This document shows, piece by piece, positions 12,980 through 45,700 of a DNA stretch of 64,000 nucleotides. The stretch is taken from NCBI GenBank assembly GCA_002269645.1, contig NIVC01002732.1, forward strand, positions 1 through 64,000, in the 5' to 3' direction. The notes under the pieces are model-generated. The model was not told the origin of the DNA. It saw nothing but the letters and a program-made list of their open reading frames with translations, and ran no database searches. The DNA comes from Macrostomum lignano. Lineage: Eukaryota. The position numbers were made by a program, and so were the translations under genes. Position 1 is the first letter of the stretch. Every line of letters begins with the position of its first letter.

Positions 12980-13217
<238 letters not shown>

Positions 13218-13236
13218 GTGCTAACTTGAGCCGCAG

Positions 13237-13553: not shown

Positions 13554-13949
13554 GTGAGTGCGCACTTTGCACGAAAGTCTTCATTCGACTCTTCTACGAG
13601 CGTACAATGGAAATACGAAGTAAGAATTCTTTTCGGGATTTTTCTTAACATCAGACATCCTTGTTCCCAATGCAGACATCATATTTCCTAATGTCCGAAA
13701 TCATTGTTCCAAATCTTCAATCCGAAGGCAATTACTGCATCAACTTTGCGACTACACCTATATGAATCGAGACTGCCGTATCAGGAGTAACTCTGATATG
13801 CCTAGTATTAGGGGCAATAAAGTTACTGAACTTAATGTTACATCAACACTAGATAATAACGCCAGCTAATTCTCCAATTATTGCTTATTCTGATGCAAAT
13901 TTAGCTTTTTGCTCTTTGCTAGCTAGTCTCTTCAGGGCTGTCTTTACAG

Positions 13950-13957
13950 TATAAATA
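13950..13957 (+). promoter_or_regulatory. Candidate TATA box of insulin-like gene copy 1 (equivalent at 17200 and in all later copies)
   Basis: TATAAATA; homology between the divergent copy and the amplified copies begins about 30 bp upstream of it. Confidence 0.45.
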
Positions 13958-14245
13958 TATGCGTTTAAGACTACGAAAGGCATATGAAAATGGTTAAACT
14001 GTACTGACTCAGTGTGTACTTTTTGCCACACGCTGGAAAGCAGCGAAGCCATAGACGAGAGTAATAAAATTGAGAACAGATTTGACCATAGACAGTCTGC
14101 CGATTATTATATTCATCAATTGAAAAGCGGGACAGTCCTGGCATTCCTTGCTTACTCAGCAGAGCATCACTTTTATTACGAGAGCCAAGTTCGGACGATC
14201 ATTTCTTCAAGCAATTTGAGAGTGAAATCTTGAGATACTCCCAAG

Positions 14246-14553
14246 GTAAGATCGGGTATTTCTTGGACTAATTTAATTTTACAGTACAAGGGACAGAGCA
14301 CCTCAGCGGTAAAAGCTTCTGACCACCAGGCGCCACATTAATTTGGGGCATGTGTGCTTGAAGAAGAACGTCTCTGAGGGCCAACCCACAACGCTCAGAG
14401 AGTGTACATGTCTGACGATTAGAAATTGTGCAGTGCAGAATTGTGCAGAATGTGCAGAATTGCCTCGCGTTTGGTTGCGTGACGACGTGGACAAAGGCAT
14501 CCTGCAGTTATTTTATCATTTATATAACTTATTTCTTTGGTTACATTCCAAAG
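14246..14553 (+). other. Predicted 5'-UTR intron of insulin-like gene copy 1
   Basis: CAAG|GTAAGA donor; pyrimidine-rich tract then AAG|G ATG. Confidence 0.55.
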
Positions 14554-14554
14554 G

Positions 14555-14866
14555 ATGCTCAAACTGCTGGTCTGCCTATTGGCGATGGCCTCCATCAGCG
14601 GCTGCCAGGCAAATTCACCGTACAAAGGCAAATTTCTCTATTGCGGTTCGGGCGAACCCGGCATGATCCGCTGGCTCTGCGGGGCAATCAAACACCTGGA
14701 GAGCCTCGGTATCAAGGATGGCTACCTCGATCCGTCTAGAGGATACGTGCCGCTAGACGCTCCTCCGCCTTGGAAGAAGAGGTCTGTTCGGCAGATTCAC
14801 AGAACCCTCATTTTTTTGAGCTGCCGGCGAAAATTCGATGCCAGAGTGCTCTGTAGGGGCCACTGA
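14555..14866 (+). CDS. Insulin-like prepropeptide, divergent 4-Cys paralog (copy 1, 103 aa)
   Basis: Signal peptide MLKLLVCLLAMASISGCQA; B chain CG-x10-C (CGSGEPGMIRWLC); KKRSVR processing site; A chain LSCRRKFDARVLC aligns to LCCRRLCDARVFC of the paralogs; AATAAA at 15026. Confidence 0.8.
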   Translation: MLKLLVCLLAMASISGCQANSPYKGKFLYCGSGEPGMIRWLCGAIKHLESLGIKDGYLDPSRGYVPLDAPPPWKKRSVRQIHRTLIFLSCRRKFDARVLCRGH

Positions 14867-15083
14867 TACAAATTATCTAAGACATCAGAGAATCAACAGA
14901 AAGTCGTTATGAAACGATTTTGTTGATTACACACGCAAACTGCTGTTGAAAGTTTTGAATATACGGCCCTGTTTCTAATACTAGCATAAACTGTATTCTG
15001 CTATTCAAAAAGTACATTATTCTACAATAAATCACTATAAAACCCGAGTCTGCAAATTAAATGCAATCGCACAGCATAAGTAC

Positions 15084-16630
15084 AGTGGTGCTAATCTGGG
15101 GGAGTAGTGCTAATCTGGATAAGTGGTGCTAATCTGGGGAAGTGGTGCTAATCTAGATAAGTGGTGCTAAACTGGGGGAAATGGTGCTAATCTGGAGGGA
15201 GTGGTGCTAAGCTGGAGGGAGTGCTGCTAATCTGGATAAGTGGTGCTAAACTGGGGGAAATGGTGCTAATCTGGAGGGAGTGGTGCTAAGCTGGAGGGAG
15301 TGCTGCTAATCTGGATAAGTGGTGCTAATCTGGGGGAAGTGGTGCTAATCTGGAGGGAGTGGTGCTAATCTGGAGCAAGTGGTGCTAATCTGGGGGAAGT
15401 GGTGCTAATCTGGAGGGAGTGGTGCTAATCTGGAGGAAGTGGTGCTAATCTGGAGGGAGTGGTGCTAATCTGGATAAGTGGCGCTAATCTGGGGAAGTGG
15501 TGCTAATCTGGATAATGGTGCTAATCTGGGGGAAGTGGTGCTAATCTGGATAAGTGGTGCTAATCTGGGGGAAGTGGTGCTAATCTGGAGGGAGTGGTGC
15601 TAATCTGGATAAGTGGCGCTAATCTGGGGAAGTGGTGCTAATCTGGATAAGTGGTGCTAATCTGGGGGAAGTGGTGCTAATCTGGATAAGTGGCGCTAAT
15701 CTGGGGAAGTGGTGCTAATCTAGGGAAGTGGTGCTAATCTGGATAACTGGTGCTAATCTGGAGGGAGTGCTGCTAATCTGGATAAGTGGTGCTAATCTGG
15801 GGAAGTGGTGCTAATCTGGATAAGTGGTGCTAAACTGGGGGAAATGGTGCTAATCTGGAGGGAGTGGTGCTAAGCTGGAGGGTGTGCTGCTAATCTGGAT
15901 AAGTGGTGCTAATCTGGGGAAGTGGTGCTAATCTGGAGGGAGTGGTGCTAATCTGGAGCAAGTGGTGCTAATCTGGGGGAAGTGGTGCTAATCTGGAGGG
16001 AGTGGTGCTAATCTGGAGGAAGTGGTGCTAATCTGGGGGAAGTGGTGCTAATCTGGATAAGTGGTGCTAATCTGGAGGAAGTGGTGCTAATCTGGGGGAA
16101 GTGGTGCTAATCTGGATAAGTGGCGCTAATCTGGGGAAGTGGTGCTAATCTAGGGAAGTGGTGCTAATCTGGATAACTGGTGCTAATCTGGAGGGAGTGC
16201 TGCTAATCTGGATAAGTGGTGCTAATCTGGGGAAGTGGTGCTAATCTGGATAAGTGGTGCTAATCTGGGGGAAGTGGTGCTAATCTGGATAAGTGGCGCT
16301 AATCTGGGGAAGTGGTGCTAATCTAGGGAAGTGGTGCTAATCTGGATAACTGGTGCTAATCTGGAGGGAGTGCTGCTAATCTGGATAAGTGGTGCTAATC
16401 TGGGGAAGTGGTGCTAATCTGGAGGGAGTGGTGCTAATCTGGAGCAAGTGGTGCTAATCTGGGGGAAGTGGTGCTAATCTGGAGGGAGTGGTGCTAATCT
16501 GGAGGAAGTGGTGCTAATCTGGGGGAAGTGGTGCTAATCTGGATAAGTGGTGCTAATCTGGAGGACGTGGTGCTAATCTGGGGGAAGTGGTGCTAATCTG
16601 GATAAGTGGTGCTAATCTGGGGGAAGTGGT
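15084..16630 (+). repeat. G-rich 19-20 bp minisatellite (GTGGTGCTAATCTGGA/G...) of unit A
   Basis: Variant units ending GATAA, GGGGAA, GAGGGA; about 1.55 kb. Confidence 0.96.
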
Positions 16631-17503
16631 ATAAAGATTTGGTACATTATAATTTTTTTGTTGATAGCTTCAGGTTGGTTGTGGTTGTTTTTGAAGTCGG
16701 ATGTGAGCTGCTCAGTGGTTGCTTTTGAGCGATTTCTGGGGTTGCTTCCAACAGGTGGTAAATACCTATATTGTGATACACAGTTCAAGAATACTGTACA
16801 TTTAAAAGCCTCAAGTTTTTTATAATAAATCATAAACTTGGTTAAATTAGTATTTGAGCGATGAGGTGGCTTTATTAGATTGATTCTCATGCAAGACAGG
16901 GTGGAATTGATTGATTCTCATCGTCTCTATGATCAAACGGTCATTGTAAAATGGGTTGATTTTCCATCTTCAAGAGTAAAGAAACTTTCAGAGTGCGGAG
17001 CAAGAGTAAATGTCCTTTTTCTCCCTACATGAGGCAATTGGCTGCTAGTATAACATGCTGACAGAAGCGAATTGTGTAAAACACACGAAGTTCCACTTAG
17101 TGACGGTTTGGGCCATAGACATAATGCAGGTCAAAATTAAAACATCAAATTAAGCTTCTTGGCCCTGTACTAGCAGTCTCTTCAGGGCTGTCTTTACAGT
17201 ATAAATATTCGTTTAGGACTACGAAAGGCATATGAAAATGGTTAAACTGTACTGACTCAGTGTGTACTTTTTGCCACACGCTGGAAAGCAGCGAAGCCAT
17301 AGACGAGAGTAATAAAATTGAGAACAGATTTGACCATAGACAGTCTGCCGATTATTATATTCATCAAATGAAAAGCGGGACAGTCCTGGTAGTCCCTGGC
17401 ATTCCTTGCTTACTCAGCAGAGCATCACTTTTATCACGAGAGCCAAGTTCGGACGATCATTTCTTCAAGCAATTTGAGAGTGAAATCTTGAGATACTCCC
17501 AAG

Positions 17504-17794: not shown

Positions 17795-17797
17795 AGA

Positions 17798-18178
17798 ATG
17801 TTCAAACTGCTGGTGTGCCTATTGGCGATGGCCTCCATTAGCTGCTGCCAGGCAAGCGCTGAGTCAAAGCACAAAGGCAAATTTCTCTATTGCGGTCCGG
17901 CCAGTCCCGTCATGATCGACTGGCTCTGCCGGTCAATCAAACACCTGGAGAGCTTCGGAGTCAAGGACGGTTACATCGATCCGGCTCAAGGATACCTGCC
18001 GCTAAGCGCTCCAGCGCCTTGGAAGAAGAGGTCTGTTCGGTCTATTGGATTAGATTACGGATTATGGGACCCACCATCGGCTCACCAGATCAACAGGCGC
18101 GGCATTCACGCGCATGTGGCCATGTCACTGTGCTGTCGGAGACTGTGTGATGCCAGGGTGTTCTGCAAAGGCTACTGA
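17798..18178 (+). CDS. Insulin-like prepropeptide, 6-Cys type (copy 2, 126 aa)
   Basis: Signal peptide MFKLLVCLLAMASISCCQA; B chain C-x11-C (YCGPASPVMIDWLC); KKR and RR sites; A chain starting GI with CC-x3-C-x5-C. True ATG at 17798 (the ORF track starts at an upstream TTG). Confidence 0.88.
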   Translation: MFKLLVCLLAMASISCCQASAESKHKGKFLYCGPASPVMIDWLCRSIKHLESFGVKDGYIDPAQGYLPLSAPAPWKKRSVRSIGLDYGLWDPPSAHQINRRGIHAHVAMSLCCRRLCDARVFCKGY

Positions 18179-19137: not shown

Positions 19138-19179
19138 ACCAAGGACCACTGTATATAGCTATATACAGTGGTCCTTGGT
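19138..19179. repeat. Perfect 42-bp spacerless palindrome (also 24287-24328, 33785-33826, 38072-38113, 42253-42294)
   Basis: ACCAAGGACCACTGTATATAG|CTATATACAGTGGTCCTTGGT; the arms are exact reverse complements. Confidence 0.95.
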
Positions 19180-19675: not shown

Positions 19676-21792
19676 AGTGGTGCTAATCTGGGGGAAATGG
19701 TGCCAATCTGGAGGGAGTAGTGCTAATCTGGAGGGAGTAGTGCTAATCTGGAGGGAGTAGTGCTAATCTGGAGGGAGTAGTGCTAATCTGGAGGGAGTGA
19801 TGCTAATCTGGAGGGAGTGGTGCTAATCTGGGGGAAATTGTGCTAATCTGGAGGGAGTAGTGCTAATCTGGAGGGAGTAGTGCTAATCTGGAGGGAGTAG
19901 TGCTAATCTGGAGGGAGTAGTGCTAATCTGGAGGGAGTGATGCTAATCTGGAGGGAGTGGTGCTAATCTGGATAAGTGGTGCTAATCTTGATAAGTGATG
20001 CTAATCTGGGGGAAATGGTGCTAATCTGGAGGGAGTGTTGCTAATCAGGAGGGAGTGGTGCTAATCTGGAGGGAGTGTTGCTAATCTGGAGGGAGTGTTG
20101 CTAATCTGGATAAGTGGTGCTAAACTGGGGGAAATGGTGCTAATCTGGAGTGGTGCTAATCTGGAGGGAGTGTTGCTAATCTGGAGGGAGTGGTGCTAAT
20201 CTAGAGGGAGTGCTGCTAATCTGGATAAGTGGTGCTAATCTGGATAAGTGGTGCTAAACTGGGGGAAATGGTGCTAATCTGGAGGGAGCAGTGCTAATCT
20301 GGAGGGAGTGGTGCTAATCTGGAGGGAGTGGTGCTAATCTGGATAAGTGGTGCTAATCTGGGGAAGTGCTGCTAATCTGGATAAGTGGTGCTAAACTGGG
20401 GGAAATGGTGCTAATCTGGATGGAGCAGTGCTAATCTGGAGGGAGCAGTGCTAATCTGGAGGGAGCAGTGCTAATCTGGAGGGAGCAGTGCTAATCTGGA
20501 GGGAGTGTTGCTAATCTGGAGGGAGTGATGCTAAGCTGGAGGGAGTGCTGCTAATCTGGATAAGTGGTGCTAAACTGGGGGAAATGGTGCAAATCTGGAG
20601 AGAGTGGTGCTAATCTGGATAAGTGGTGCTAAACTGGGGGAAATGGTGCTAATCTGGATGGAGCAGTGCTAATCTAGAGGGAGTAGTGCTAATCTGGAGG
20701 GAGCAGTGCTAATCTGGAGGGAGCAGTGCTAATCTGGAGGGAGCAGTGCTAATCTGGAGGGAGTAGTGCTAATCTAATCTGGGGGAAGTGGTGCTAATCT
20801 GGGGGAAGTGGTGCTAATCTGGAGGGAGTGGTGCTAATCTGGAGAGAGTGGTGCTAAGCTGGAGGGAGTGGTGCTAATCTGGATAAGTGGTGCTAATCTG
20901 GGGAAGTGGTGCTAATCTGGATAAGTAGTGCTAATCTGGATAAGTGGTGCTAATCTGGGGAAGTGGTGCTAAACTGGGGGAAATGGTGCAAATCTGGAGA
21001 GAGTGGTGCTAATCTGGATAAGTGGTGCTAAACTGGGGGAAATGGTGCTAGTCTGGAGGGAGTGGTGCTAATCTGGAGGGAGCAGTGCTAATCTGGAGGG
21101 AGTGGTGCTAATCTGGAGGGAGTGATGCTAAGCTGGAGGGAGTGGTGCTAAGCTGGAGGGAGTGGTGCTAAACTGGAGGGAGTGGTGCTAATCTGGATAA
21201 GTGGTGCTAAACTGGGGGAAATGGTGCTAATCTGGAGGGAGTGGTGCTAATCTGGGGGAAGTGGTGCTAATCTGGATAAGTGGTGCTAATCTGGATAAGT
21301 GGTGCTAAACTGGGGGAAATGGTGCTAATCTGGAGGGAGTGGTGCTAAGCTGGAGGGAGTGCTGCTAATCTGGATAAGTGGTGCTAATCTGGGGAAGTGG
21401 TGCTAATCTGGGGGCAGTGGTGCTAATCTGGAGGGAGTGGTGCTAATCTGGAGAGAGTGGTGCTAATCTGGGGAAGTGGTGCTAATCTGGGGGAAGTGGT
21501 GCTAATCTGGGGGAAGTGGTGCTAATCTGGAGGGAGTGGTGCTAATCTGGAGAGAGTGGTGCTAAGCTGGAGGGAGTGGTGCTAATCTGGATAAGTGGTG
21601 CTAATCTGGGGAAGTGGTGCTAATCTGGATAAGTGGTGCTAAGCTGGGGAAGTGGTGCTAATCTGGATAAGTGGTGCTAATCTGGGGGAAGTGGTGCTAA
21701 TCTGGATAAGTGGTGCTAATCTGGATAAGTGGTGCTAATCTGGGGGAAGTGGTGCTAATCTGGATAAGTGGTGCTAATCTGGGGGAAGTGGT
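19676..21792 (+). repeat. G-rich minisatellite of unit B
   Basis: Same family as 15084-16630; about 2.1 kb. Confidence 0.96.
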
Positions 21793-22942: not shown

Positions 22943-23323
22943 ATGTTCAAACTGCTGGTCTGCCTATTGGCGATGGCCTCCATCAGCTGCTGCCAGGCAA
23001 GCGCTGAGTCAAAGCACAAAGGCAAATTTCTCTATTGCGGTCCGGCCAGTCCCGTCATGATCGACTGGCTCTGCCGGTCAATCAAACACCTGGAGAGCTT
23101 CGGAGTCAAGGACGGCTACATCGATCCGGCTCAAGGATACCTGCCGCTAAGCGCTCCGGCGCCTTGGAAGAAAAGGTCTGTTCGGTCTATTGGATTAGAT
23201 TACGGATTATGGGACCCACCATCGGCTCACCAGATCAACAGGCGCGGCATTCACGCGCATGTGGCCATGTCACTGTGCTGTCGGAGACTGTGTGATGCCA
23301 GGGTGTTCTGCAAAGGCTACTGA
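22943..23323 (+). CDS. Insulin-like prepropeptide, 6-Cys type (copy 3, 126 aa)
   Basis: Protein identical to copy 2; differs only at synonymous sites. Confidence 0.88.
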   Translation: MFKLLVCLLAMASISCCQASAESKHKGKFLYCGPASPVMIDWLCRSIKHLESFGVKDGYIDPAQGYLPLSAPAPWKKRSVRSIGLDYGLWDPPSAHQINRRGIHAHVAMSLCCRRLCDARVFCKGY

Positions 23324-25344: not shown

Positions 25345-25560
25345 TGTTGTATACCGATCCGAATCCAATGTACTTTGATTTTCAGTCGTTGCCCCAGCGT
25401 TAATTTATTTGTCTGTGTCCCAAACAGCTACCGACTGACTCTGACTCTATAAAGGCTTGCCGTTACTTATATCGTTAAATAAAATATACATTCAACTTAG
25501 GCTACGCTCTCGTTATAACAGCTTTCGGCTCAGCACAGAGTCAAAGCACAAAACACAACA
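25345..25560 (+). repeat. 5' LTR
   Basis: Matches 29541-29756 with no difference seen by eye; contains TATAAA and AATAAA. Confidence 0.97.
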
Positions 25561-27008
25561 ATGGCGTCGCAGTCACTTGGCCAACTGCCGCTGGAGAAGC
25601 CCGATCGAGCTCAAACCTGGATGACTGCCTTCCAAGCGCTGGCCCGAGCAAAGGACTGGACTGATAGTGATGGAAAGAAGACCATCGCAGACAACTTTTT
25701 GGCGCACTGCGGGCTCACAGCCTTGGAGAAGATACAAAGCATAATCGCCCCCAAATCCGTGACCGACCTGACTTTCGATGAAATCAACACTGCCGTGCAA
25801 GCGTACCTAAAGCCAAAGGAAAAGCTGGTCATCGCTGAACGCGTTCGTTTCTTCGCCATGCGGCAAGCACCAAATGAATCAATTTCTGACTTCGTTAGCC
25901 GACTTCGTCGTGCCGCTAAGGACTGTAAGTTTGATGATTTGAAGACATCCACCAGTCCTCTCGAGGAACTGCTCCAAATGGCGCTAATTTCTGGGCTCAG
26001 CAATGTAAACCAACAACAACGCGTTCTGGAAGCCACTCAAATCAAATCATTTAAGTCCGTTCCCGAAATTGTCGACTTTATTCGCGACCTAGAGCAGGTG
26101 ACAGCTTTTGTGTCCATAAAATCAAGCGACTTTCAAGCGACTTTGACTCAGCCAGCTCCTTCAATCCAAACACACGAAGCCTCTGTGCATTACTCGCAGC
26201 GACATAATGGACATCGGAGTGTCAAGGACTGTCGTTACTGCGGCAAAGCACATTCGAAAGGAAAATGCCCGGCTTTTGGCAAGCTCTGTTCAAAATGTGG
26301 TAAGAAAAATCACTTCGCCAGTGTATGTCGCTCATCATCTGCACGGCCTGTGCACCAAGTCACTGACCCATCAGCTCATGAAATAGACAATGAGCCACAT
26401 GAGAAGACTTCTCTGATGCATCTCAGCGACGTGGGCACCGTCCACGCTGTCAACGTGGCCACCGAGCCACTTATTATCGATGGCAAGACCGTCGACATGC
26501 AGATCGATACAGGCGTCTCTGTCTCCGTGCTCTCCAGTTCGCAATGGGAACGACTGGGTCGACCCTCGCTGCAGAAGTGTTTTCGGCGGCTAGAAGCCTT
26601 TGATGGTCACGTGATGAAATCACTCGGAAAGCTGGCAACCACGGTTGAACTACGAGGTCATCTGCACCCTGCAGAACTCATTGTGGTCAACTCGAGCAAA
26701 CCATATGGCTTACTTGGTCGCGATCTGTTGGACGCGGATGACCTCTTTCACACCACAAGTGTGCCCCAGAACAACACCCGCGTAGTTGAGCCACTGCCTA
26801 CCATAAAAGGCGTGAAAGCTCGCATGGAGGTTGTTGACGGTGCCAGACCCAGATTCTGCCGTGCTCGATCCGTGCCTATTGCAATTGAGGGGCAGATTAA
26901 CGCCGAACTCGACCGCTTGCAACAGCTAGGAATAATTGAACCCATCGAGGGACCCGTGAGCAATGCGTCGCCCGTGGTGTGGGTGAAAAAGAAAGATGGC
27001 ACCTTGCG
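25561..27008 (+). CDS. gag-pol: Gag (two Zn knuckles) - aspartic protease - start of RT
   Basis: CRYCGKAHSKGKC and CSKCGKKNHFASVC knuckles; IDTG protease motif; ASPVVWVKKKDGTLR RT motif; frame lost near 27009. Confidence 0.93.
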
Positions 27009-28350
27009 ATGTGTGCCGATTACAGTGTACACGTGAATGAGAAAATAAAGTCCGACTCTCATCCGATCCCCAATGTAGAAATCCTTTTCTCACGCTTGAA
27101 AAACGCAAAAGTCTTCGCCACCGTCGACCTCCGCTCGGCCTACTGGCAAATTGAACTGGATGAAGCGGCCAGAGATCTCTCTATCATCAACACGTCGCGT
27201 GGACTGTACCGAGTAAACAGACTGCAAATGGGGATGAAAAACGCCTCGTTCATCTTCCAGAGAACTATGGAATCGATTTTGTCAGACATCAAAGGACTGC
27301 TGATTTATCAAGACGACATCCTGGTGCACGCACCAGATGCGGCTACTCTAGAAAAGCGCCTTGCCGCGGTGCGCACCCGACTACAAGAAAAGCGCGTCAC
27401 CATCAACGAGTCAAAGTGCATCAACTACACCGATTCCATCTCTTTTCTTGGATTCAAGATCTCTGCCGCCGGAATCCAGCCAGACGATCGGCTTGTTGAA
27501 AAAGTCAGACAAGTTTCTGCACCGACTAACAAATCTGAGCTCGCGAGCTTTCTGGGACTAGTCAACTTCTTTGGGAGACTGATTCCGAACTTCGCTCGAA
27601 AGACCGCTCCTCTTAACCATCTGCGAAAATCCAACGTCAACTTTGACTGGACCGACGAGTGCTCTCGAGCTTTTAATAACCTCAAAGCCGAAATCGCCTC
27701 TGCGCCAATAGTGCAGCCCTATAGCCTATCAAAGGAGCTGACTCTAACAACGGATGCCTCGAAGAGCTCAATAGCTGCTGTAGTGACTCAGGAAGGGCAT
27801 CCCGTAATATTTGTATCAAGGACGCTGTCATCCGCCGAATCAAATTATTCAAATATTGAGCGCGAGGCCCTCGCCATCTTCTGGGCCGTCGCTCGACTGA
27901 AGCACTTCCTTCATGGCCGTCACTTCACAATCAAGACAGATCATCAGCCACTGACTCGCCTTTTCCGCGGTGGCATCCCTCTGAACACATCGGCGAGAAT
28001 CGGGCGCTGGGCTATGCATCTCATGCAATTTGACTTCAACATCGAGTACGTGCGAGGCCGCGACATTCCACACGCTGACGCTTTATCTCGGCTCCGCTTT
28101 GATCACCCGTCAGCAGACGACAAGGAAACGTTTGATGCTATCAACGTCGTGGTATTTGAATCGCCGGTGATCGAGGCCGGAAGAATTTTGGCAGAAATGG
28201 ACGCAGACCCGTTCACCCAGAAGATTTTAATGAGAGTACGCAATGGAAATTGGCAAGGTTGCTCGCAGGCAGAGTCAAGCTTCAAAGCCGTTTCCGGAAA
28301 GCTAACGCTGGAAAACGGACTTCTTTACATGCAGAGGAGGGTTTACATCC
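27009..28350 (+). CDS. pol: Reverse transcriptase and RNase H segment of pol
   Basis: MCADY, DLRSAYWQI, YQDD, FLG, TDAS, YSNIEREALAI, TDHQPL, HADALSR motifs. Confidence 0.93.
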
Positions 28351-29403
28351 CCCACGGTTGCGCCGGGCTGCCTTTGACGCGATCCATGACACCCACTCTG
28401 GAATTCAGGCCTCATACAACCTGCTTTCAGCGTCTTGCTTGTGGCCTGGGATGCAACAGGATGTGTCACGATTTGTCCAACGCTGCCCGGTCTGCAGCCG
28501 CCTACGACCGCGTGTCGGCCACGACAGGGATCGATGGCCCGCCCCGGACTATCCATTCCAACGCATTCACATGGACTGGGCGCATGTAAGAGGAGCTGGC
28601 GACATACTGATTATCGTTGACGCTCATTCTGGCTGGATAGAAGCGTTTCCCTGCCAAAACAGAGTGGCCAGCACTGTCCAGCGGTGCCTCTGCGCCATCT
28701 TTGCACGCTTTGGTATGCCGGAGCTGGTTGTGTCAACAACGCACCCGAATTTGTGGCCGATAGCCTCAACGCATGGCTGCGCGCACATGGAGTGAAGAAA
28801 ATGGAGTCACCCGCCTACTATCCTCAGGCAAACGGCCTCGCAGAAAGGGCAGTGCAGACCGTTAAATCAGCGCTGCGTGCATGGTCGGAGAGAATAACTC
28901 ACATGGATTTCCCATTCTACCTGCAAAAAGTGCTCATGCACCATCGCAACTCCTCAAGAAGCCGCGGCCAGTGCCCAGCCGAGTTGGTGCTTGGTAGACG
29001 CCTTCGTGTACCGGTCGTCTCACAGTTCGAGCAAGGAGACAACGTCATCTACCAGCCACAGAAATCAACTCAGGGAAGCCAGGCTACATTTCTAATGACT
29101 GCTGGACACAATACGGCATGGATTTTAGAAGATGAGAGCCTGAAGCTGGCCAGCACCAATCAGTTGGCCCCATCAATGCCACAGCAGGACGCCCTTACAG
29201 CGGACGAAGAGGAAGCGAATGACAATCTGCCTGTGCAACAGCCCCCGATGCAAATGGCGGCCGGAGAAGAGCAGGCACCAACGACCCATCAGCAGGATGC
29301 CCCAGAGCAACCGAATGACAACCCGATGCGCCGAAGCTCGCGAAATCGTCGGGCCCCTGATCGATTTGTGCCGTCATTGCTGAACAGTATAGACGCTGAT
29401 TAA
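28351..29403 (+). CDS. pol: Integrase segment of pol (frameshift near 28735)
   Basis: HDTH...CPVC zinc finger; IHMDW, IIVDAHSGWIE; (D)NAPEF; QANGLAERAVQTVK; stop at 29401-29403. Confidence 0.9.
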
Positions 29404-29540
29404 ATTCCAAACTTTCAACGAATTCGCCGTTACTTTGTTAAGCACCAAGCTCCCTAAGCTCATCCGTTCATACTCAAACCCACTAATCAATAACCACCAA
29501 CGCTTTTCCGTTGCAGTTCTCATTCCCTCGAAGGGGGACA

Positions 29541-29756
29541 TGTTGTATACCGATCCGAATCCAATGTACTTTGATTTTCAGTCGTTGCCCCAGCGTTAAT
29601 TTATTTGTCTGTGTCCCAAACAGCTACCGACTGACTCTGACTCTATAAAGGCTTGCCGTTACTTATATCGTTAAATAAAATATACATTCAACTTAGGCTA
29701 CGCTCTCGTTATAACAGCTTTCGGCTCAGCACAGAGTCAAAGCACAAAACACAACA
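29541..29756 (+). repeat. 3' LTR
   Basis: Direct repeat of 25345-25560, preceded by the polypurine tract. Confidence 0.97.
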
Positions 29757-32443
29757 GGGAGCAGTGCTAATCTGGAGGGAGTGTTGCTAATCTGGAGGGA
29801 GTGGTGCTTATCTGGAGGGAGTGGTGCTAATCTGGAGGGAGTGGTGCTAAACTGGAGGGAGTGGTGCTAATCTGGAGGGAGTGGTGCTAAACTGGAGGGA
29901 GTGGTGCTAATCTGGAGGGAGTGGTGCTAAACTGGAGGGAGTGTTGCTAATCTGGAGGGAGTGGTGCTAATCTGGAGGGAGTGGTGCTAATCTGGAGGGA
30001 GTGGTGCTAATCTGGAGGGAGTGGTGCTAATCTGGAGGGAGTGGTGCTAATCTGGATAAGTGGTGCTAAACTGGGGGAAATGGTGCTAATCTGGAGGGAG
30101 TGGTGCTAATCTGGAGGGAGTGATGCTAAGCTGGAGGGAGTGATGCTAAGCTGGAGGGAGTGGTGCTAAACTGGAGGGAGTGGTGCTAATCTGGATAAGT
30201 GGTGCTAAACTGGGGGAAATGGTGCTAATCTGGAGGGAGTGGTGCTAATCTGGGGGAAGTGGTGCTAATCTGGATAAGTGGTGCTAATCTGGATAAGTGG
30301 TGCTAAACTGGGGGAAATGGTGCTAATCTGGAGGGAGTGGTGCTAAGCTGGAGGGAGTGCTGCTAATCTGGATAAGTGGTGCTTATCAGGGGAAGTCGTG
30401 CTAATCTGGATAAGTGGTGCTTATCTGGGGAAGTCGTGCTAATCTGGATAAGTGGTGCTAAACTGGGGGAAATGGTGCTAATCTGGAGGGAGCAGTGCTA
30501 ATCTGGAGGGAGTAGTGCTAATCTGGAGGGAGCAGTGCTAATCTGGAGGGAAATGGTGCTAATCTGGAGGGAGCAGTGCTAATCTGGAGGGAGCAGTGCT
30601 AATCTGGAGGGAGTAGTGCTAATCTGGAGGGAGTAGTGCTAATCTGGAGGGAGTAGTGCTAATCTGGAGGAAATGGTGCTAATTTGGATAAGTGGTGCTA
30701 ATCTGGATAAGTGATGCTAAACTGGGGGAAATGGTGCTAATCTGGAGAGAGTGGTGCTAATCTGGAGGGAGCAGTGCTAATCTGGGGGAAGTGGTGCTAA
30801 TCTGGAGGGAGTAGTGCTAATCTGGAGGGAGTGCTGCTAATCTGGATAAGTGGTGCTAAACTGGGGGAAATGGTGCTAATCTGGAGGGAGTGGTGCTAAG
30901 CTGGAGGGAGTGCTGCTAATCTGGATAAGTGGTGCTTATCTGGGAAAGTGCTGCTAATCTGGATAAGTGGTGCTAATCTGGGGAAGTGGTGCTAATCTGG
31001 GGAAGTGGTGCTAATCTGGAGGGAGTGGTGCTAAGCTGGAGGGAGTGCTGCTAATCTGGATAAGTGGTGCTAAGCTGGGGAAGTGGTGCTAATCTGGATA
31101 AGTGGTGCTAATCTGGGGGAAGTGGTGCTAATCTGGGGGAAGTGGTGCTAATCTGGGGGAAGTGGTGCTAATCTGGATAAGTGGTGCTAATCTGGGGGAA
31201 GTGGTGCTAATCTGGAGGAAGTGGTGCTAATCTGGGGGAAGTGGTGCTAATCTGGATAAGTGGTGCTAATCTGGGGGAAGTGGTATAAAGATTTGGTACA
31301 TTATAATTTTTTTGTTGATAGCTTCAGGTTGGTTGTGGTTGTTTTTGAAGTCGTTTGTGAGCTGCTCAGTGGTTGCTTTTTAGCGATTTCTGGGGTTGCT
31401 TTCAACAGGTGGTAAGCATAATACCTGTATTGTGATACACAGTTCAAAAATACTGTGCATTTAAAAGCCTCAAGTTTTAATAATAAATCATAAACTTGGT
31501 TAAATTAGTATTTTAGCGATGATGTGGCTTAATTAGATTGATTCTCATGCAGGACAGGGTGGAATTGTTTGATTGTCATAGTCTCTATGAACGGTCATTG
31601 TAAAATGGGTTGATTTTCCGTCTTCAAGAGTAAAGAAACTTTCAGAGTGCGGAGCAAGAGTAAATGTCCTTTTTCTCCCTACATGAGGCAATTGGCTGCT
31701 AGTATAACATGCTGACAGAAGCGAATTGTGTAAAACACACGAAGTTCCACTTAGTGACGGTTTGGGCTATAGACATAATGCAGGTCAAAATTAAAACATC
31801 AAATTAAGCTTCTTGGCCCTGTACTAGCAAAGTCTCTTCAGGGCTGTCTTTACAGTATAAATATTCGTTTAGGACTACGAAAGGCATATGAAAATGGTTA
31901 AACTGTACTGACTCAGTGTGTACTTTTTGCCACACGCTGGAAAGCAGCGAAGCCATAGACGAGAGTAATAAAATTGAGAACAGATTTGACCATAGACAGT
32001 CTGCCGATTATTATATTCATCAATTGAAAAGCGGGACAGTCCTGGCATTCCTTGCTTACTCAGCAGAGCATCACTTTTATCACGAGAGCCAAGTTCGGAC
32101 GATCATTTCTTCAAGCAATTTGAGAGTGAAATCTTGAGATACTCCCAAGGTAAGATCGAATATTTCTTGGACTAATTTAATGTTACAGTACAAGGGACAG
32201 AGAACCTTAGCGGGAAACGCTTCTGATCACCAGGCGCCACATTAATTTGAGGCCTGTGTGCTCGAAGAACGTCCATGATGGCCAACCCACAAGGCTCAGA
32301 GAATGTACATGTCTGACGATTAGAAATTCATGGCCGCTGTACAGCCTGTGTGAGCGTGTTTGTGAGTGCGTGTCTGCGTACAGTACTGGCGCGCAGTTAT
32401 TTTATCATTTATATAACTTATTTCGTTGCTTACATTCCAGAGA

Positions 32444-32824
32444 ATGTTCAAACTGCTGGTCTGCCTATTGGCGATGGCCTCCATTAGCTGCTGCCAGGCA
32501 AGCGCTGAGTCAAAGCACAAAGGCAAATTTCTCTATTGCGGTCCGGCCAGTCCCGTCATGATCGACTGGCTCTGCCGGTCAATCAAACACCTGGAGAGCT
32601 TCGGAGTCAAGGACGGCTACATCGATCCGGCTCAAGGATACCTGCCGCTAAGCGCTCCGGCGCCTTGGAAGAAGAGGTCTGTTCGGTCTATTGGATTAGA
32701 TTACGGATTATGGGACCCACCATCGGCTCACCAGATCAACAGGCGCGGCATTCACGCGCATGTGGCCATGTCACTGTGCTGTCGGAGACTGTGTGATGCC
32801 AGGGTGTTCTGCAAAGGCTACTGA
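32444..32824 (+). CDS. Insulin-like prepropeptide, 6-Cys type (copy 4, 126 aa)
   Basis: Protein identical to copy 2. Confidence 0.88.
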   Translation: MFKLLVCLLAMASISCCQASAESKHKGKFLYCGPASPVMIDWLCRSIKHLESFGVKDGYIDPAQGYLPLSAPAPWKKRSVRSIGLDYGLWDPPSAHQINRRGIHAHVAMSLCCRRLCDARVFCKGY

Positions 32825-36729: not shown

Positions 36730-37110
36730 ATGTTCAAACTGCTGGTGTGCCTATTGGCGATGGCCTCCATTAGCTGCTGCCAGGCAAGCGCTGAGTCAAA
36801 GCACAAAGGCAAATTTCTCTATTGCGGTCCGGCCAGTCCCGTCATGATCGACTGGCTCTGCCGGTCAATCAAACACCTGGAGAGCTTCGGAGTCAAGGAC
36901 GGTTACATCGATCCGGCTCAAGGATACCTGCCGCTAAGCGCTCCGGCGCCTTGGAAGAAGAGGTCTGTTCGGTCTATTGGATTAGATTACGGATTATGGG
37001 ACCCACCATCGGCTCACCAGATCAACAGGCGCGGCATTCACGCGCATGTGGCCATGTCACTGTGCTGTCGGAGACTGTGTGATGCCAGGGTGTTCTGCAA
37101 AGGCTACTGA
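36730..37110 (+). CDS. Insulin-like prepropeptide, 6-Cys type (copy 5, 126 aa)
   Basis: Protein identical to copy 2. Confidence 0.88.
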   Translation: MFKLLVCLLAMASISCCQASAESKHKGKFLYCGPASPVMIDWLCRSIKHLESFGVKDGYIDPAQGYLPLSAPAPWKKRSVRSIGLDYGLWDPPSAHQINRRGIHAHVAMSLCCRRLCDARVFCKGY

Positions 37111-40920: not shown

Positions 40921-41301
40921 ATGTTCAAACTGCTGGTGTGCCTATTGGCGATGGCCTCCATTAGCTGCTGCCAGGCAAGCGCTGAGTCAAAGCACAAAGG
41001 CAAATTTCTCTATTGCGGTCCGGCCAGTCCCGTCATGATCGACTGGCTCTGCCGGTCAATCAAACACCTGGAGAGCTTCGGAGTCAAGGACGGTTACATC
41101 GATCCGGCTCAAGGATACCTGCCGCTAAGCGCTCCGGCGCCTTGGAAGAAGAGGTCTGTTCGGTCTATTGGATTAGATTACGGATTATGGGACCCACCAT
41201 CGGCTCACCAGATCAACAGGCGCGGCATTCACGCGCATGTGGCCATGTCACTGTGCTGTCGGAGACTGTGTGATGCCAGGGTGTTCTGCAAAGGCTACTG
41301 A
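40921..41301 (+). CDS. Insulin-like prepropeptide, 6-Cys type (copy 6, 126 aa)
   Basis: Protein identical to copy 2; CDS appears identical to copy 5. Confidence 0.88.
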   Translation: MFKLLVCLLAMASISCCQASAESKHKGKFLYCGPASPVMIDWLCRSIKHLESFGVKDGYIDPAQGYLPLSAPAPWKKRSVRSIGLDYGLWDPPSAHQINRRGIHAHVAMSLCCRRLCDARVFCKGY

Positions 41302-42707
41302 TAGGAATTAGCTAAGACTAAATTATAGCTAAGCAGAGAATCAAACTGAAAGTCATGAATCGTTTTGTTGATTAAAATACATGTTTAACTGCTTTCGAAA
41401 GTTAACATTTCCAGTTTTTAAAGTTATCATAAATCGCATTCACTTATTAAAAGTTTTAAATTAATCTATACCATAATCTACACCATAAAGCCCAATCTGC
41501 AAATTTATGAATTCACTTGCACAGCATAGCTAGTTTTATTAAATGGCCTGCATACTCTTGAACATTCCTGTCTGAAAAGTGACCCCCCCTTGGCTGTCTA
41601 GCAAGGGACACACCTGTCTAGGGGCAGAGTAGTCCAAATCTCGTGCTACAATCCCTGATTCGATTCATTTTAATCATTGGTTACATATGTATTTGTACAT
41701 ATATACACTTATATGTACACAGCTTTTATTTCGCAGCAATACATGCATTTTTATGCACGAATAAAAATTTCTGGCTGGGGTTTTATCGTGCGATTCACGT
41801 ACGCCCCCCCCCATAGTCAGAAAGTGTAAAATGAACGTACTGACGATCAGAAGATATTCAGAGTCACAGCTGCACACGCGACCCGCTGCTATATGAGCGT
41901 GTGTTACGCATACATGTATGTTCCACATGATGAATCGTCTGTAGTAAACCATGCACGGGCTAGCTAATACATTTAAATGTGCGCAAGAGTCAGATTGATG
42001 GGTAATAATTGCCTCTCTGTTGGTTGCGAGACGACGTCGCGGAAAGCGTTGCTCCAGTTTTCCAACCCCCTATGCGATTTACATGTACGTGTACACATGT
42101 ACATGTATGTGCAACACTTGTACGCAAGTCCATGCATAACTCAATTGCATGGTTTTCACACATTTAACTGTAGAACGTACGGCTCGTACATGGCTCAGCT
42201 TGAGCTTACTATTTTAAATGGATATGAAAATTCTGCACCGGTTACCGTTTGTACCAAGGACCACTGTATATAGCTATATACAGTGGTCCTTGGTTTGTAC
42301 ATAGACAAAGTAATCTATTGAATTGGAATTCAACTTACAATTTTCAAGCAAACTTCACATTAACTAGAAAAGAAACACTAAGATCGATTGTGGAATCAAC
42401 TTAATAGGTACTTAAAATATTATGTGATCAGGCAAACTCGAATTTATAAAATTGTGAAACATGGGACTTATACATAAACCTTGTTATAGTGTAATCACAT
42501 TCGACTCGCTATTTTAAATTCGAAAGTCATGATCTTCGATTTCGAAATTAAATATAGAATTTTAGCCGGATCCATAGCCAATAGAAAACGGGTTCCGGTG
42601 CCGGAACTCTAGCCATTACCTATATTATATAGCCTACTGACTTGTATTGTCATAAATCATGTGATGGCCCTAGGCTAGCCTGGCTAGGTTTAGGTAGGCT
42701 TATTACG

Positions 42708-45700
42708 TATAACATTTTTTACTTTTGACATTTGTTTCAGTTTATAAACTATATATGATATGGCATCATAGGGTAGAATCCTAGGCCTAGTAGGCCTATC
42801 TTATCTAAAGGGCAAGGCTAAAGTCTAAAGATTCTGAGGTCAGCTGGATAGGAATATCACAGGTTTCACAGTAGGACATTATTACAATTTTATGCAAATG
42901 ATAACATAAACATAGCCATCATAGGCCTATCTCAAGTTTTCATTCAACTTCAAGCATAGTTAGGCCTATAATTGATATTTTGGGTTTGTGTTTGTGGTAT
43001 ATTTATATTTGGGTGATGATATTTTGGGCATATGATATTGATAGAAAGAACTTTTGGAGTTGTGATTTTTTGGGTTTTTGATTCCCTCCTATACTATAGT
43101 CCTAGAATTCCTAAGCTAGGCCAGGTTTATAGGACTATGTACTATAGTCTAGCTTTTAGTATACTTAGATTTCTTATCAAATGTCAATACTTGTTGGTAT
43201 TGATAAACTATATTTATATCAAATATAATAATTTGGTTATTCTATTCCATAGAGATCCTAATTCAATGGGATCCTAGAAAATTGGATAATTAGGAAAAGA
43301 AGGAATAAGGAAAATTGGATTCTCACAGACTAGGATCCCAACCCTATGAAACACAAAAATCAAAAATAGGTCTTTTGATTAAAAATTTATAGAATTAGTG
43401 ATCAATTGTACTTATTTACATGATCAGATTAGGCCTAGCCTACTTTGTTGGTTATAAAACTTTGCATTGATTTTATTGTGATCTTTATATTTTTTGCTCA
43501 ATTTTATTTAACTTTATATAGACCTACAAACTACAATATACTAAAAGACCTAATCCCAATTCCCAAATCCCAATCCCAATCCCAAGAAAAAAATGATTCC
43601 CAATCCTGATCTTGCCCAAAGATTTCAATCCCATCTGACCTCTAATTTTAACAGCCTGTAAAAAATAAATATCAAATAAAAACCATTTGCCTTCATTATC
43701 TCCATTACTATTATATGTATCTTCTTAATAGTATATGTATATATATATATGTATATGTATATATATATATGTATATATGTATCTTCTTAATATTATATGT
43801 ATTCTTCAACAATAGTATTTAGGTGTTTTGAAGACAATATTTGCCTTTTCACATATTTTCTTAATCAAAATTTCATTTTTAGCAATCTATAAAATTTCTC
43901 AAATCTTGTCTCAAAATTTTCCACAAAAGTCAATATTTCTCAACAATAGAAAAATGTTGAGATCTCATCTCAAATCTCATCTCATCAAGATCTTGCAACA
44001 CCTCTAATAAACATTACCTTTGGCTTTAACTTTTATTGTAGCCTGACCTATATATATTTATTCCACTAAATAAAGCAAGTATACTAGTACAAAATAAATA
44101 TCTTACATATTTATTCTATTTTTGCAAATCATTACCACTAGCAATGGTTTCTTGATAATAATAATGACTAATAAAGATAGATTTAATAGATATAATAATA
44201 AGGAATAAATTGGCACAAATACTCAAAAAGAGTAAAGCTTTGTATCATAGATCATACATTAGTTCGAATCTATCATTATATAGGTATTTATGAATATGAT
44301 TGACTACACATGATAATTAATATAAAATAACTAATAAATAAAATAACTATTTCATTATTTCAAAATAACTAATGAAATAACTAATATTTTAGGATAAAAT
44401 AATTAATGATAAAAAAGAGAAATGTAAATATAATATACATTCAATATTGTGGCCATCTAAATTTAATTTGATTTTAAAATACATTTAATATTTTTATACT
44501 TGATTTTAATTTTAAAGACCCTTTAATAGTTTTATCAAAAATTTTTATTTTAATTATACTATAGTATACTATAGGCCACATGTGACCTGCAAAGCCTCCC
44601 TATCCAGCCCTTGAGTCCTTTGAAACTTCAACAGCAATCTAGCTATCAATGTCTATATCTTTTCTTAGCAGTCTTCTTTCTAATCCTTTCCCTTTTTCTC
44701 TCCTAGTCTTGTCTTCTCTCTCCTTTCTTCTCTAATATTTTTTCTCCTTTCTCCTCTCGTTTCTCTTCCCTCTCTTCTTTATTTTCTCACCTTTCCTTTT
44801 TCCTATCTTCCTTCTCTCTGGTCTCTCTGGTACTTGAGATAAAAAAGTTAGCCAACCCCTAGTCTATGCAATTGATAATAGAAATAATATCTTAACTGAT
44901 TTTCTTTAAACTTATACCATTTGATTAGAAATTTTTTTATGGTGATACACCTTTTGTGGCTAAGTAGAGAGCAATATACTGCATTGTTCAATTCTAAAAG
45001 AAATTAAATATAAAAAAACATGCTTTTTGCAAAGCCCAAGTAGACTTTCAACCTGAAATGCATTGTAAGAATACTAGAAAAAAACCTGACTGACTGAATT
45101 CTGATTTTGATAAGGATTGTAGAACAATAGGCCTTTTATCATCAGTTTACTGGCTGGTTTTGACATTGACTTGAATTTTGCAACAGTTTAAAATATAGTA
45201 TGGAAGCATGTAGTGCAAGACTTGTTTGAGATTGCATAATTGAATTGCTAACTTTAATGGTGACTCCAACCAACTTGATTTGGGTATTGAATTATAAGTG
45301 CTACAATTTATATAATCAGATTAATGACAGCTAGCCTAAATGCAAATGGCTGGAACTGCTAATCTCTGATCTCTGTGTATATATTTTAAAGTAGATATTA
45401 GACATACTTAGTGGATATAGTTATATAAAATTTTTACCAAGGAATGACAATTTCTTTGAAACCTTTGCTAGTAAAACTGTTTAAATTAAGGCCTATTCTT
45501 ATTTATAGTAGGATCAATAAGGTTTTAATAGTCTTATATTGATAAAAACTTAGGATCATTGTTTATGTTTATTGCATTTTAAAATATGCTTGCAATATAC
45601 TGCATTTTATTAAAACTTATTGAGTCATTGACAGATAATCTATAATTTAGCTTATTTTCTTATGAGTAGTAGTTTAAAGTGAGTGATTGGCCATTTGTTA

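What the first reader, a model, noticed from the sequence alone, without database searches (positions are those of the whole stretch)
13921..42748. Six-gene tandem array of an atypical insulin-like peptide, five copies encoding one identical protein
Seen: six plus-strand ORFs with a signal peptide and a B-chain C-x11-C including the CG motif. All have a KKRSVR site; the five identical copies also have RR before an A chain that starts GI and carries CC-x3-C...C. Established: this Cys/processing layout defines the insulin/IGF/relaxin superfamily. Inference: keeping five copies of one identical precursor points to dosage selection for a bulk-secreted product (for example a gland, seminal or venom-like secretion) rather than an ordinary low-abundance hormone. 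This is the best candidate for an undescribed system in the window.
Basis: partly seen in the sequence, partly recalled or inferred. Interest (0 to 1): 0.9.

Follow-up and report, generated by a model that had tools for sequence, protein, structure and literature searches.

The report
Flatworm tandem array, insulin-shaped peptide gene
A real, recently amplified array in the flatworm Macrostomum lignano carries five identical copies and one decayed copy of a species-restricted gene for a small secreted peptide precursor that is laid out like proinsulin but shows no detectable sequence or fold similarity to insulins.

Summary
The window is Macrostomum lignano contig NIVC01002732.1. It carries five identical 126-aa ORFs and one divergent ORF in head-to-tail units at 13896-42748.

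The copies are separate loci, not an assembly artefact. They differ by SNVs and minisatellite length, and one unit carries a retrotransposon insertion. A syntenic contig has two copies.

The gene is under purifying selection. All 5 variable CDS sites are synonymous. Against an old paralogue (Mlig028676), dN/dS is 0.02-0.04 in the two Cys-bearing domains. The spacer between conserved dibasic sites is unalignable and predicted disordered. This fits a convertase-processed two-chain peptide.

Insulin membership is not shown:
- The A-chain spacing is CC-x3-C-x5-C, not x8.
- Pfam PF00049 gives no hit even on trimmed B+A constructs, while controls hit.
- A custom insulin HMM scores no better than Cys-preserving shuffles.
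- AlphaFold/Foldseek find no insulin or IGF match.

The dosage-selection inference is weak. Whole units, non-coding DNA included, are 99.4-99.8% identical, so protein identity mainly reflects recent duplication or gene conversion. Copy 0 looks like a pseudogene.

Verdict: an uncharacterised, lineage-restricted, insulin-shaped prohormone family of moderate interest.

The parts
13896..17058 (+). Array unit 0: the divergent, decayed copy (ORF 14555-14866, 103 aa) followed by a 20-bp minisatellite (15084-16630).
   Evidence: It is 88% identical to the other units in the gene part. An in-frame deletion removes most of the spacer and the start of the A domain, and two A-domain Cys are lost. dN/dS against copy 1 is 1.3. 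The orthologous copy on the syntenic contig is frameshifted. It is probably a pseudogene.
17798..18178 (+). Copy 1 CDS (126 aa + stop), in unit 17059-22211.
   Evidence: TATATAA lies 34 nt before the ATG, a TTCCAG|AGA acceptor-like site lies just before the ATG, and ATTAAA lies 70 nt after the stop.
22943..23323 (+). Copy 2 CDS, in unit 22212-31712. This unit is interrupted by an LTR retroelement.
   Evidence: It differs from copy 1 at 5 sites, all synonymous third-codon positions.
32444..32824 (+). Copy 3 CDS, in unit 31713-36000.
36730..37110 (+). Copy 4 CDS, in unit 36001-40191.
40921..41301 (+). Copy 5 CDS, in the terminal unit 40192-42748. This unit has no minisatellite; the array ends here.
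   Evidence: The flank beyond 42748 is shared with the syntenic contig.
19676..21792 (.). 20-bp G-rich minisatellite (AGTGGTGCTAATCTGGAGGG) between genes. Equivalent blocks lie at 15084-16630, 24823-25334 plus 29756-31284, 34323-35580 and 38610-39771.
   Evidence: The block lengths differ, which accounts for the different unit lengths. The blocks are a likely substrate for unequal crossing-over (inference).
25346..29757 (+). Ty3/Gypsy-type LTR retroelement inserted in the minisatellite of unit 2. It is not part of the gene family but shows that unit 2 is a distinct locus.
   Evidence: The 216-bp LTRs (25346-25561 and 29542-29757) are identical apart from the ambiguous boundary base. The termini are TG..CA and the 5-bp target duplication is GGGAG. 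Protease, RT, RNase H and integrase domains are present.

Best explanation
The region is a genuine, young tandem array in Macrostomum lignano. It has five intact copies and one decaying copy of a gene known only from this species.

Proposed mechanism (inferred unless marked shown):
- The gene encodes a small secreted pro-peptide. The precursor enters the ER and loses a ~21-aa signal peptide (inferred cut ASA|ESK).
- It folds around six conserved cysteines.
- A prohormone-convertase-type enzyme cuts it at two conserved basic sites, KKR78 (or RSVR81) and RR101.
- This releases a variable, disordered 21-aa connecting peptide.
- What remains is a 54-aa 'B' chain (ESKHK...APAPW) disulfide-linked to a 25-aa 'A' chain (GIHAHVAMSLCCRRLCDARVFCKGY).
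- The product most likely acts as an extracellular signalling peptide.

Relation to insulin: the layout is that of proinsulin or prorelaxin. Homology to the insulin superfamily is unproven, and I put it at about 40%.

Origin of the array: it grew by unequal crossing-over, probably helped by the 20-bp minisatellite between genes. It is kept uniform by recency and/or gene conversion. The five identical proteins therefore reflect recent amplification plus ordinary purifying selection, not demonstrable selection for dose.

Shown: the array itself, its distinct units, copy-number difference between contigs, purifying selection, domain-wise conservation and spacer disorder.

Inferred: signal cleavage site, convertase cleavage, disulfide pairing, two-chain product and signalling role.
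For: Array is real:
- Units differ by SNVs, by minisatellite length and by a unique retroelement insertion with a target-site duplication.
- A second, syntenic contig (NIVC01002081.1) has the same flanks, a degraded copy and two intact copies.

Gene is functional:
- All 5 variable CDS sites among the copies are synonymous third positions (P about 0.002).
- The paralogue Mlig028676 (P0002) is alignable only within the CDS.
- Against it, the B domain has dN/dS 0.04 at dS 0.60, and the A domain has dN/dS 0.02 at saturated dS.

Prohormone logic:
- Both paralogues keep KKR and RR/KR, while the sequence and length between those sites are unalignable.
- AlphaFold puts pLDDT below 50 on exactly that segment in both runs, and predicts ordered elements on either side.
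- M. lignano has a neuronal PC2 homologue needed for development (PMC4490696).

Transcription:
- The GenBank gene models of this assembly derive from transcript assemblies (PMC5730564), and all seven copies are annotated genes.
- Each copy has TATATAA 34 nt before the ATG, an acceptor-like CAG 3 nt before the ATG, and ATTAAA 70 nt after the stop.

Young array:
- Units are 99.4-99.8% identical over 2.5 kb, with the CDS no more conserved than the flanks.
Against: - No peptide, transcript-level or tissue data could be retrieved here.
- Cleavage at the basic sites is inferred only. An RR also sits inside the A domain (CCRRLC).
- The exact signal-peptide cut is uncertain. The conserved SISCC motif might belong to the mature peptide, which would then have 8 Cys.
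- The structure models rest on 3-4 sequences. Only the best of five models is reasonable (mean pLDDT 67-71), and disulfide geometry could not be inspected.
- No relatives outside M. lignano were found, so conservation rests on one paralogue pair.
Confidence: 0.6

Rival explanations
1. It is a true but highly divergent member of the insulin/IGF/relaxin superfamily. It would adopt the insulin fold with B7-A7, B19-A20 and A6-A11-type disulfides, and signal through the worm's insulin-receptor kinase or a relaxin-type GPCR.
For: - The precursor order is signal, B, spacer, A.
- C-G-x10-C has exactly the insulin spacing. CC-x3-C is present, and there are six conserved Cys.
- Dibasic sites bound a variable, disordered spacer.
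- The predicted helix order is one helix through the second B Cys, then a long and a short helix in A.
- Schistosome insulin-like peptides also have very long B chains of 51-53 aa (PMC5391603).
- Clustered, intronless multi-copy ILP genes with pseudogenes are known for bombyxin (PMC3745042).
Against: - The A-chain interval is x5, not the x8 of the family signature. Schistosome ILPs keep x8.
- PF00049 and Ins_beta give no hit at E<=10 for the full protein, for two B+A mini-constructs, or for a construct padded back to x8. Relaxin-2, bombyxin-II, INSL3 mini-constructs and proinsulin all pass.
- A custom six-member insulin HMM run with filters off gives 3.9 bits. Of 500 Cys-preserving shuffles, 192 score as high.
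- Foldseek finds no insulin, IGF or relaxin match for either model.
- There is no intron in the C-peptide region. The paralogue's only intron is in the signal-peptide region.
Confidence: 0.4
2. It is an uncleaved single-chain secreted Cys-rich protein made in bulk by a gland, for example a prostate or seminal, adhesive, rhabdite or antimicrobial product. On this view, copy number is selected for dose and the insulin-like pattern is coincidental. This is the functional part of the first reader's proposal.
For: - The gene is species-restricted and tandemly amplified, as many gland and reproductive genes are.
- The predicted beta-alpha-beta-beta unit in the 'B' region is not an insulin feature.
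- There is no profile similarity to insulins.
- Copy number differs between contigs, 5 against 2.
Against: - dN/dS of 0.02-0.04 between paralogues is far from the fast evolution usual for reproductive secretions.
- The conserved dibasic pairs around a freely evolving, disordered spacer are hard to explain without cleavage.
- Identity of the copies extends equally to non-coding DNA, so it is no evidence for dosage selection.
- No expression data were found.
Confidence: 0.2
3. The array is an assembly artefact, or the ORFs are meaningless reading frames inside a long repeated DNA unit.
For: - The M. lignano assembly is highly redundant and repeat-rich (PMC5730564).
- All ORFs in the units are conserved simply because the units are ~99.6% identical.
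Against: - Copies carry distinct SNVs and minisatellite lengths, and one carries a private retroelement insertion with a target-site duplication.
- An independent contig has the same locus with a different copy number.
- An old paralogue shares only the CDS, at dN/dS of 0.04 or less.
- All five CDS variants are synonymous.
Confidence: 0.03
4. It is a thioredoxin-fold-like redox protein. The YCGP motif sits at the start of a helix after a beta-strand, as WCGPC does in thioredoxin.
For: Thioredoxin, DsbA, Sco, GPX and glutaredoxin appear among the weak Foldseek matches to the beta-alpha-beta part.
Against: - All these matches have E>=0.7, probability <=0.25 and TM <=0.27.
- There is no Pfam thioredoxin hit at E<=10.
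- There is no second active-site Cys (CGPA).
- The rest of the thioredoxin fold is absent, and a disordered spacer with dibasic sites interrupts the chain.
Confidence: 0.02

Closest known systems
Insulin/IGF/relaxin superfamily precursors (Pfam PF00049; PROSITE-type A-chain signature CC-x3-C-x8-C)
   Same: - The precursor order is signal peptide, B domain, excised spacer, A domain.
- The B motif C-G-x10-C is present, and the A domain starts with CC-x3-C.
- There are six Cys.
- Dibasic sites flank a variable spacer.
- About 10 residues precede CC, as in relaxin A chains.
   Different: - The last A-chain interval is 5 residues, not 8.
- There is no profile similarity beyond the Cys positions.
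- Prolines at B9/B12-equivalent positions push the helix start later.
- The B chain is 54 aa, with a predicted beta-hairpin extension.
- No structural match was found by Foldseek.
Flatworm insulin-like peptides (Schistosoma SjILP/SmILP/ShILP; PMC5391603)
   Same: - Both come from the same phylum.
- Both have unusually long B chains (51-53 aa in schistosomes, 54 aa here).
- Both are small precursors of about 130 aa.
   Different: - Schistosome ILPs have the A motif CCC-x2-C-x8-C and two exons split by an 8-12 kb intron.
- Here the A motif is CC-x3-C-x5-C and the array genes are intronless.
- No sequence match to any flatworm protein outside M. lignano was found in 1.84 billion representatives.
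Bombyxin multigene family of Bombyx mori (PMC3745042)
   Same: Both comprise many intronless preproinsulin-like genes clustered in the genome as pairs or triplets, with near-identical copies and some pseudogenes. Bombyxin shows that multi-copy arrays occur for an ordinary neurosecretory hormone.
   Different: - Bombyxins are recognisable insulins (PF00049 E=1e-12 for bombyxin-II).
- Bombyxin clusters hold diverged families rather than ~99.6%-identical 4-5 kb units separated by a minisatellite.
Mlig028676 (g1/g2/g4; PAA52434.1, PAA91742.1, PAA63362.1), 'hypothetical protein' of M. lignano
   Same: It is the only detectable relative. It is 74-79% identical, with the same six Cys, the same KKR and K/R-R sites, and nearly identical B and A domains.
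   Different: - It is a single gene per contig, flanked by unrelated genes.
- It has one intron in the signal-peptide region and a different N-terminus.
- Its spacer is acidic and unalignable with the one here.
- There is no similarity outside the CDS.

Membership tests
Insulin/IGF/relaxin superfamily | N-terminal signal peptide on a small precursor | tested here: met
   By inspection only; no signal-peptide predictor was available. The sequence MFK-LLVCLLAMA-SISCCQASA|E has the n-, h- and c-regions and small residues at -3 and -1. The paralogue has an equivalent ...QTSA|E.
Insulin/IGF/relaxin superfamily | B-chain motif C-G-x10-C (two Cys 11 residues apart) | tested here: met
   YCGPASPVMIDWLC is present in all six ORFs and in the paralogue.
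Insulin/IGF/relaxin superfamily | A-chain signature CC-x3-C-x8-C | tested here: not met
   The sequence is CCRRLCDARVFC, that is CC-x3-C-x5-C, in both paralogues. The position where the x8 Cys would fall is the C-terminal Tyr. That x8 is the family rule comes from PROSITE-type knowledge and from PMC5391603.
Insulin/IGF/relaxin superfamily | Connecting peptide bounded by basic cleavage sites and free to vary | tested here: met
   KKR and RR/KR are conserved while the 21-27 residues between them are unalignable. That segment has pLDDT below 50. Actual cleavage was not tested.
Insulin/IGF/relaxin superfamily | Profile similarity to PF00049 (or nematode Ins_beta PF03488) | tested here: not met
   No hit at E<=10 for the full precursors, for B+A mini-constructs, or for an x8-padded construct. 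Four positive controls passed. A custom HMM with filters off scored 3.9 bits, within the Cys-preserving shuffle distribution of 3.3 +/- 3.3.
Insulin/IGF/relaxin superfamily | Insulin fold: B helix plus two A helices held by three specific disulfides | tested here: inconclusive
   Two AlphaFold2 runs gave three helices in the right order, plus an extra beta-strand and hairpin. Mean pLDDT was 67.5 and 70.6 from MSAs of 3-4 sequences. Foldseek against PDB and BFVD gave no insulin or IGF match; the best E was 0.7. Model coordinates and Cys distances were not available.
Insulin/IGF/relaxin superfamily | Conserved intron in the C-peptide region (typical, not universal) | tested here: not met
   The array genes are single-exon ORFs. 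The paralogue's intron lies after codon 3, in the signal-peptide region. This is weak evidence, since bombyxins also lack introns.
Insulin/IGF/relaxin superfamily | Mature two-chain peptide that binds an insulin-receptor kinase or relaxin-type GPCR | not testable with these tools
   This needs peptidomics and receptor assays.
Thioredoxin-fold proteins | CxxC (or CxxS) active site within a full beta-alpha-beta-alpha-beta-beta-alpha fold; Pfam thioredoxin-clan hit | tested here: not met
   Only a CGPA motif is present. There is no Pfam hit. Foldseek matches to thioredoxin, DsbA and GPX are non-significant and cover only about 40 residues.

The most novel reading that the evidence does not exclude
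This is a previously unrecognised, structurally remodelled branch of the insulin superfamily, or a convergent two-chain hormone. It would be specific to macrostomid flatworms and have three distinctive features:
- a shortened A-chain loop (CC-x3-C-x5-C);
- a 54-aa B chain carrying a beta-hairpin;
- a copy-number-variable tandem array.
It would serve as a ligand in growth, regeneration or reproductive signalling of a regeneration model organism.
Probability: 0.35. Interest if true: 0.6.

Novelty: new variant of a known kind. Interest (0 to 1): 0.42.

Why it matters
M. lignano is a model for regeneration, stem cells, ageing and sexual selection. Insulin-type signalling bears on all of these, yet I found no description of its peptide ligands in the papers searched.

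If this family is a real two-chain hormone, it would add a lineage-specific signalling peptide. It would also test how far the insulin scaffold can be remodelled, for example by removing one helical turn from the A chain.

It also illustrates a point for genome scans. Identical tandem copies in a repeat-rich, recently duplicated genome are not in themselves evidence of dosage selection. The informative signals here were the synonymous-only variation and the domain-wise dN/dS against an old paralogue.

Tried and rejected
1. Pfam on the full proteins gave nothing. Trimmed and padded constructs with positive controls also gave no insulin hit.
2. PDB sequence searches with the protein and with a two-sequence profile gave only chance hits at E about 0.4-0.6, such as PGRP-LB and V1a receptor.
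3. An exhaustive phmmer search against 1.84 billion representatives found only the M. lignano paralogue and one low-complexity repeat protein (P0004), judged spurious.
4. Foldseek against PDB (twice) and BFVD gave no significant match. The weak thioredoxin-like beta-alpha-beta matches were considered and rejected.
5. Retrocopy origin of the intronless array genes cannot be established. Similarity to the intron-containing paralogue is confined to the CDS and the flanks are unrelated, so either intron loss or retroposition long ago is possible.
6. Literature and supplement look-ups for Mlig028676, for insulin-like peptides in Macrostomum, and for tissue expression gave nothing usable. The gene identifier of the array copies themselves is masked in the tools, so expression tables could not be queried for it.
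7. Assembly artefact was rejected (see rival explanations).
8. Rfam and tRNA scans of the window were empty.

Full report
**Origin of the window.** The 126-aa protein is encoded seven times in Macrostomum lignano assembly GCA_002269645.1 (Mlig_3_7). Five copies lie on contig NIVC01002732.1, at record positions equal to the window coordinates. Two lie on NIVC01002081.1. The window is therefore the first 64 kb of a contig from a free-living flatworm. That genome is known to be more than half repetitive and partly duplicated (PMC5730564).

**Checking the observation.**
- One search lists the six plus-strand ORFs, and one search shows the five longer ones translate identically.
- From the first ATG the protein is MFKLLVCLLAMASISCCQASAESKHKGKFLYCGPASPVMIDWLCRSIKHLESFGVKDGYIDPAQGYLPLSAPAPWKKRSVRSIGLDYGLWDPPSAHQINRRGIHAHVAMSLCCRRLCDARVFCKGY.
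- The sixth ORF (14555-14866) keeps the leader, the first Cys pair and KKRSVR. An in-frame deletion removes most of the spacer and the start of the A domain, and two of the four A-domain Cys are replaced.

**Anatomy of the array.**
- Self-comparison gives head-to-tail units at 13896-17058 (divergent), 17059-22211, 22212-31712, 31713-36000, 36001-40191 and 40192-42748.
- Each full unit has about 0.73 kb upstream, the 381-bp CDS, about 1.5 kb of unique downstream sequence, and a 20-bp G-rich minisatellite of 1.2-2.1 kb.
- Differences in minisatellite length explain the different unit lengths.
- In unit 2 the minisatellite is split by a 4.4-kb Ty3/Gypsy-type LTR element at 25346-29757. Its LTRs are identical, and it has TG..CA ends and a GGGAG target duplication.
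- Each gene has TATATAA 34 nt before the ATG. A pyrimidine-rich ...TTCCAG|AGA sits immediately before the ATG; it could be a spliced-leader or cis-splice acceptor. ATTAAA lies 70 nt after the stop.

**Real or artefact.**
- The units carry private SNVs, private minisatellite lengths and one private transposon insertion.
- A second contig has the same left flank, a frameshifted relic of copy 0, two intact copies and the same right flank, at 92-98% identity.
- These are separate loci, and copy number differs (5 against 2) between what are probably homeologous or allelic regions.

**Selection versus recency.**
- Over 2.5 kb around the genes the five units are 99.4-99.8% identical.
- Variable sites number 5/725 upstream, 5/381 in the CDS and 10/1425 downstream.
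- The CDS is not more uniform than the non-coding DNA. Identical proteins are what recent duplication or gene conversion would give anyway, so the dosage-selection inference has no support from the sequence.
- The gene is not drifting, however. All five CDS variants are synonymous third-position changes. The probability is about 0.002, given 4 transitions and 1 transversion and the synonymous fractions of this CDS.

**The old paralogue.**
- The only relatives found are M. lignano 'hypothetical protein' Mlig028676 g1/g2/g4 and fragments of it. This held across 5.8 billion clustered proteins and 1.84 billion exhaustively scanned representatives.
- DNA similarity is confined to the CDS.
- That gene has one intron in the signal-peptide region and different neighbours.
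- Against it, the B domain has dN/dS 0.04 at dS 0.60, and the A domain has dN/dS 0.02 at saturated dS.
- The segment between KKR and RR/KR differs in length and cannot be aligned.
- Copy 0 against copy 1 gives dN/dS 1.3. Together with its lost Cys and the frameshifted orthologue, this marks it as a probable pseudogene.

**Structure.**
- Two AlphaFold2 runs were made, on the precursor and on the mature region, with 3-4-sequence MSAs. Both give the same picture.
- The predicted order is a short strand (FLY), a 16-residue helix from P37 through C44 to S52, a beta-hairpin (YIDP..GYL), a disordered stretch, a long helix into CCRR, and a short helix (ARVF).
- The disordered stretch coincides with the KKR...RR spacer.
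- Confidence is high only for the B region. Only the top-ranked models are reasonable, with mean pLDDT 67.5 and 70.6.
- Foldseek against PDB (twice) and BFVD found nothing significant, and no insulin, IGF or relaxin among the listed matches.
- Weak matches to thioredoxin-like beta-alpha-beta units are not meaningful.

**Is it an insulin?**
- For: the layout, the exact C-G-x10-C spacing, CC-x3-C, six conserved Cys, the excisable spacer and three helices in the expected order.
- Against: the x5 interval breaks the family signature.
- Against: PF00049 and Ins_beta fail at E<=10 even on idealised B+A constructs and on an x8-padded construct. Relaxin-2, bombyxin-II and INSL3 constructs and proinsulin all pass.
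- Against: a custom insulin HMM run without filters scores 3.9 bits, no better than shuffles that keep the Cys in place (192 of 500 score as high).
- Against: there is no fold match.
- The resemblance therefore lies in the Cys framework and precursor logic only.
- Schistosome ILPs also have long B chains but keep x8 (PMC5391603).
- I rate true homology at about 0.4. The claim that it works like a proinsulin-type precursor is stronger than the claim that it is an insulin.

**Likely mechanism.** The evidence tags are as in the Best explanation section.
- Secretion follows signal cleavage (inferred ASA|ESK).
- Oxidative folding pairs the two B-domain Cys with two A-domain Cys and forms one intra-A bridge (inferred by analogy).
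- Cleavage occurs at KKR78 or RSVR81 and at RR101 by a PC-type convertase, which M. lignano has (PMC4490696).
- Carboxypeptidase trimming follows, releasing a 54 + 25-aa two-chain peptide.
- Transcription is supported indirectly, because the GenBank annotation of this assembly is built from transcript assemblies.
- Tissue and expression level remain unknown.

**Comparison and novelty.**
- Clustered, intronless, multi-copy insulin-like genes with pseudogenes are a known pattern for bombyxin, an ordinary neurohormone (PMC3745042). The array as such is not surprising.
- What is new is an uncharacterised, species-restricted family with insulin-like architecture, a shortened A loop and an extended B chain.
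- I file it as a new variant of a known kind, of moderate interest, with insulin membership unproven.

Noticed in passing
window 25346-29757: A full-length Ty3/Gypsy-type LTR retroelement (4.4 kb) with identical 216-bp LTRs, TG..CA ends and a 5-bp GGGAG target duplication. It is inserted inside the minisatellite of array unit 2. The protease, RT/RNase H and integrase ORFs lie in different frames. The identical LTRs imply a very recent insertion.
   Followed up: partly
window 15084-16630, 19676-21792, 24823-25334 + 29756-31284, 34323-35580, 38610-39771: A 20-bp G-rich minisatellite (AGTGGTGCTAATCTGGAGGG), with 26-107 repeats per block, sits between all array genes. Block length varies. It is a plausible substrate for the unequal crossing-over that built the array.
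   Followed up: partly
L007 2576-2816 (NIVC01002081.1, about 127.7 kb): On the syntenic contig, the counterpart of copy 0 is broken into three reading frames and lacks the A domain. Only two intact copies follow it. Copy number at this locus therefore differs between the two contigs.
   Followed up: yes
window, 34 nt and 3 nt before each ATG; 70 nt after each stop: Each copy has TATATAA only 34 nt before the ATG, and a pyrimidine tract ending in CAG three nt before the ATG. This implies either an extremely short leader or a spliced-leader or cis-splice acceptor. An ATTAAA poly(A) signal follows each stop.
   Followed up: no
window 2315-2809 (minus strand): An ORF with a weak GAF-domain hit (E 6.7e-5, just above the Pfam cut-off). 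It may be an exon of a phosphodiesterase-like gene upstream of the array.
   Followed up: no
window 1-13900 and 42750-64000: The flanks are almost wall-to-wall satellites. Examples are (GA)n, (TAGA)n at 4610-5630, 34-mers at 3633-4343 and 7080-8047, a 43/65-mer at 9891-11073, a 10/22-mer at 53417-55103, a 32-mer at 56224-58714 and (TGTC)n at 61257-62415. Many long 'ORFs' there are only translated repeats. There are no Rfam or tRNA hits in the window.
   Followed up: partly
precursor residues 13-21 (SISCCQASA) in all copies and in P0002: A CC pair at the end of the presumed signal peptide is conserved between the old paralogues, although the hydrophobic core before it is not. If the signal peptide is cut earlier, the mature peptide would have eight Cys.
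   Followed up: no
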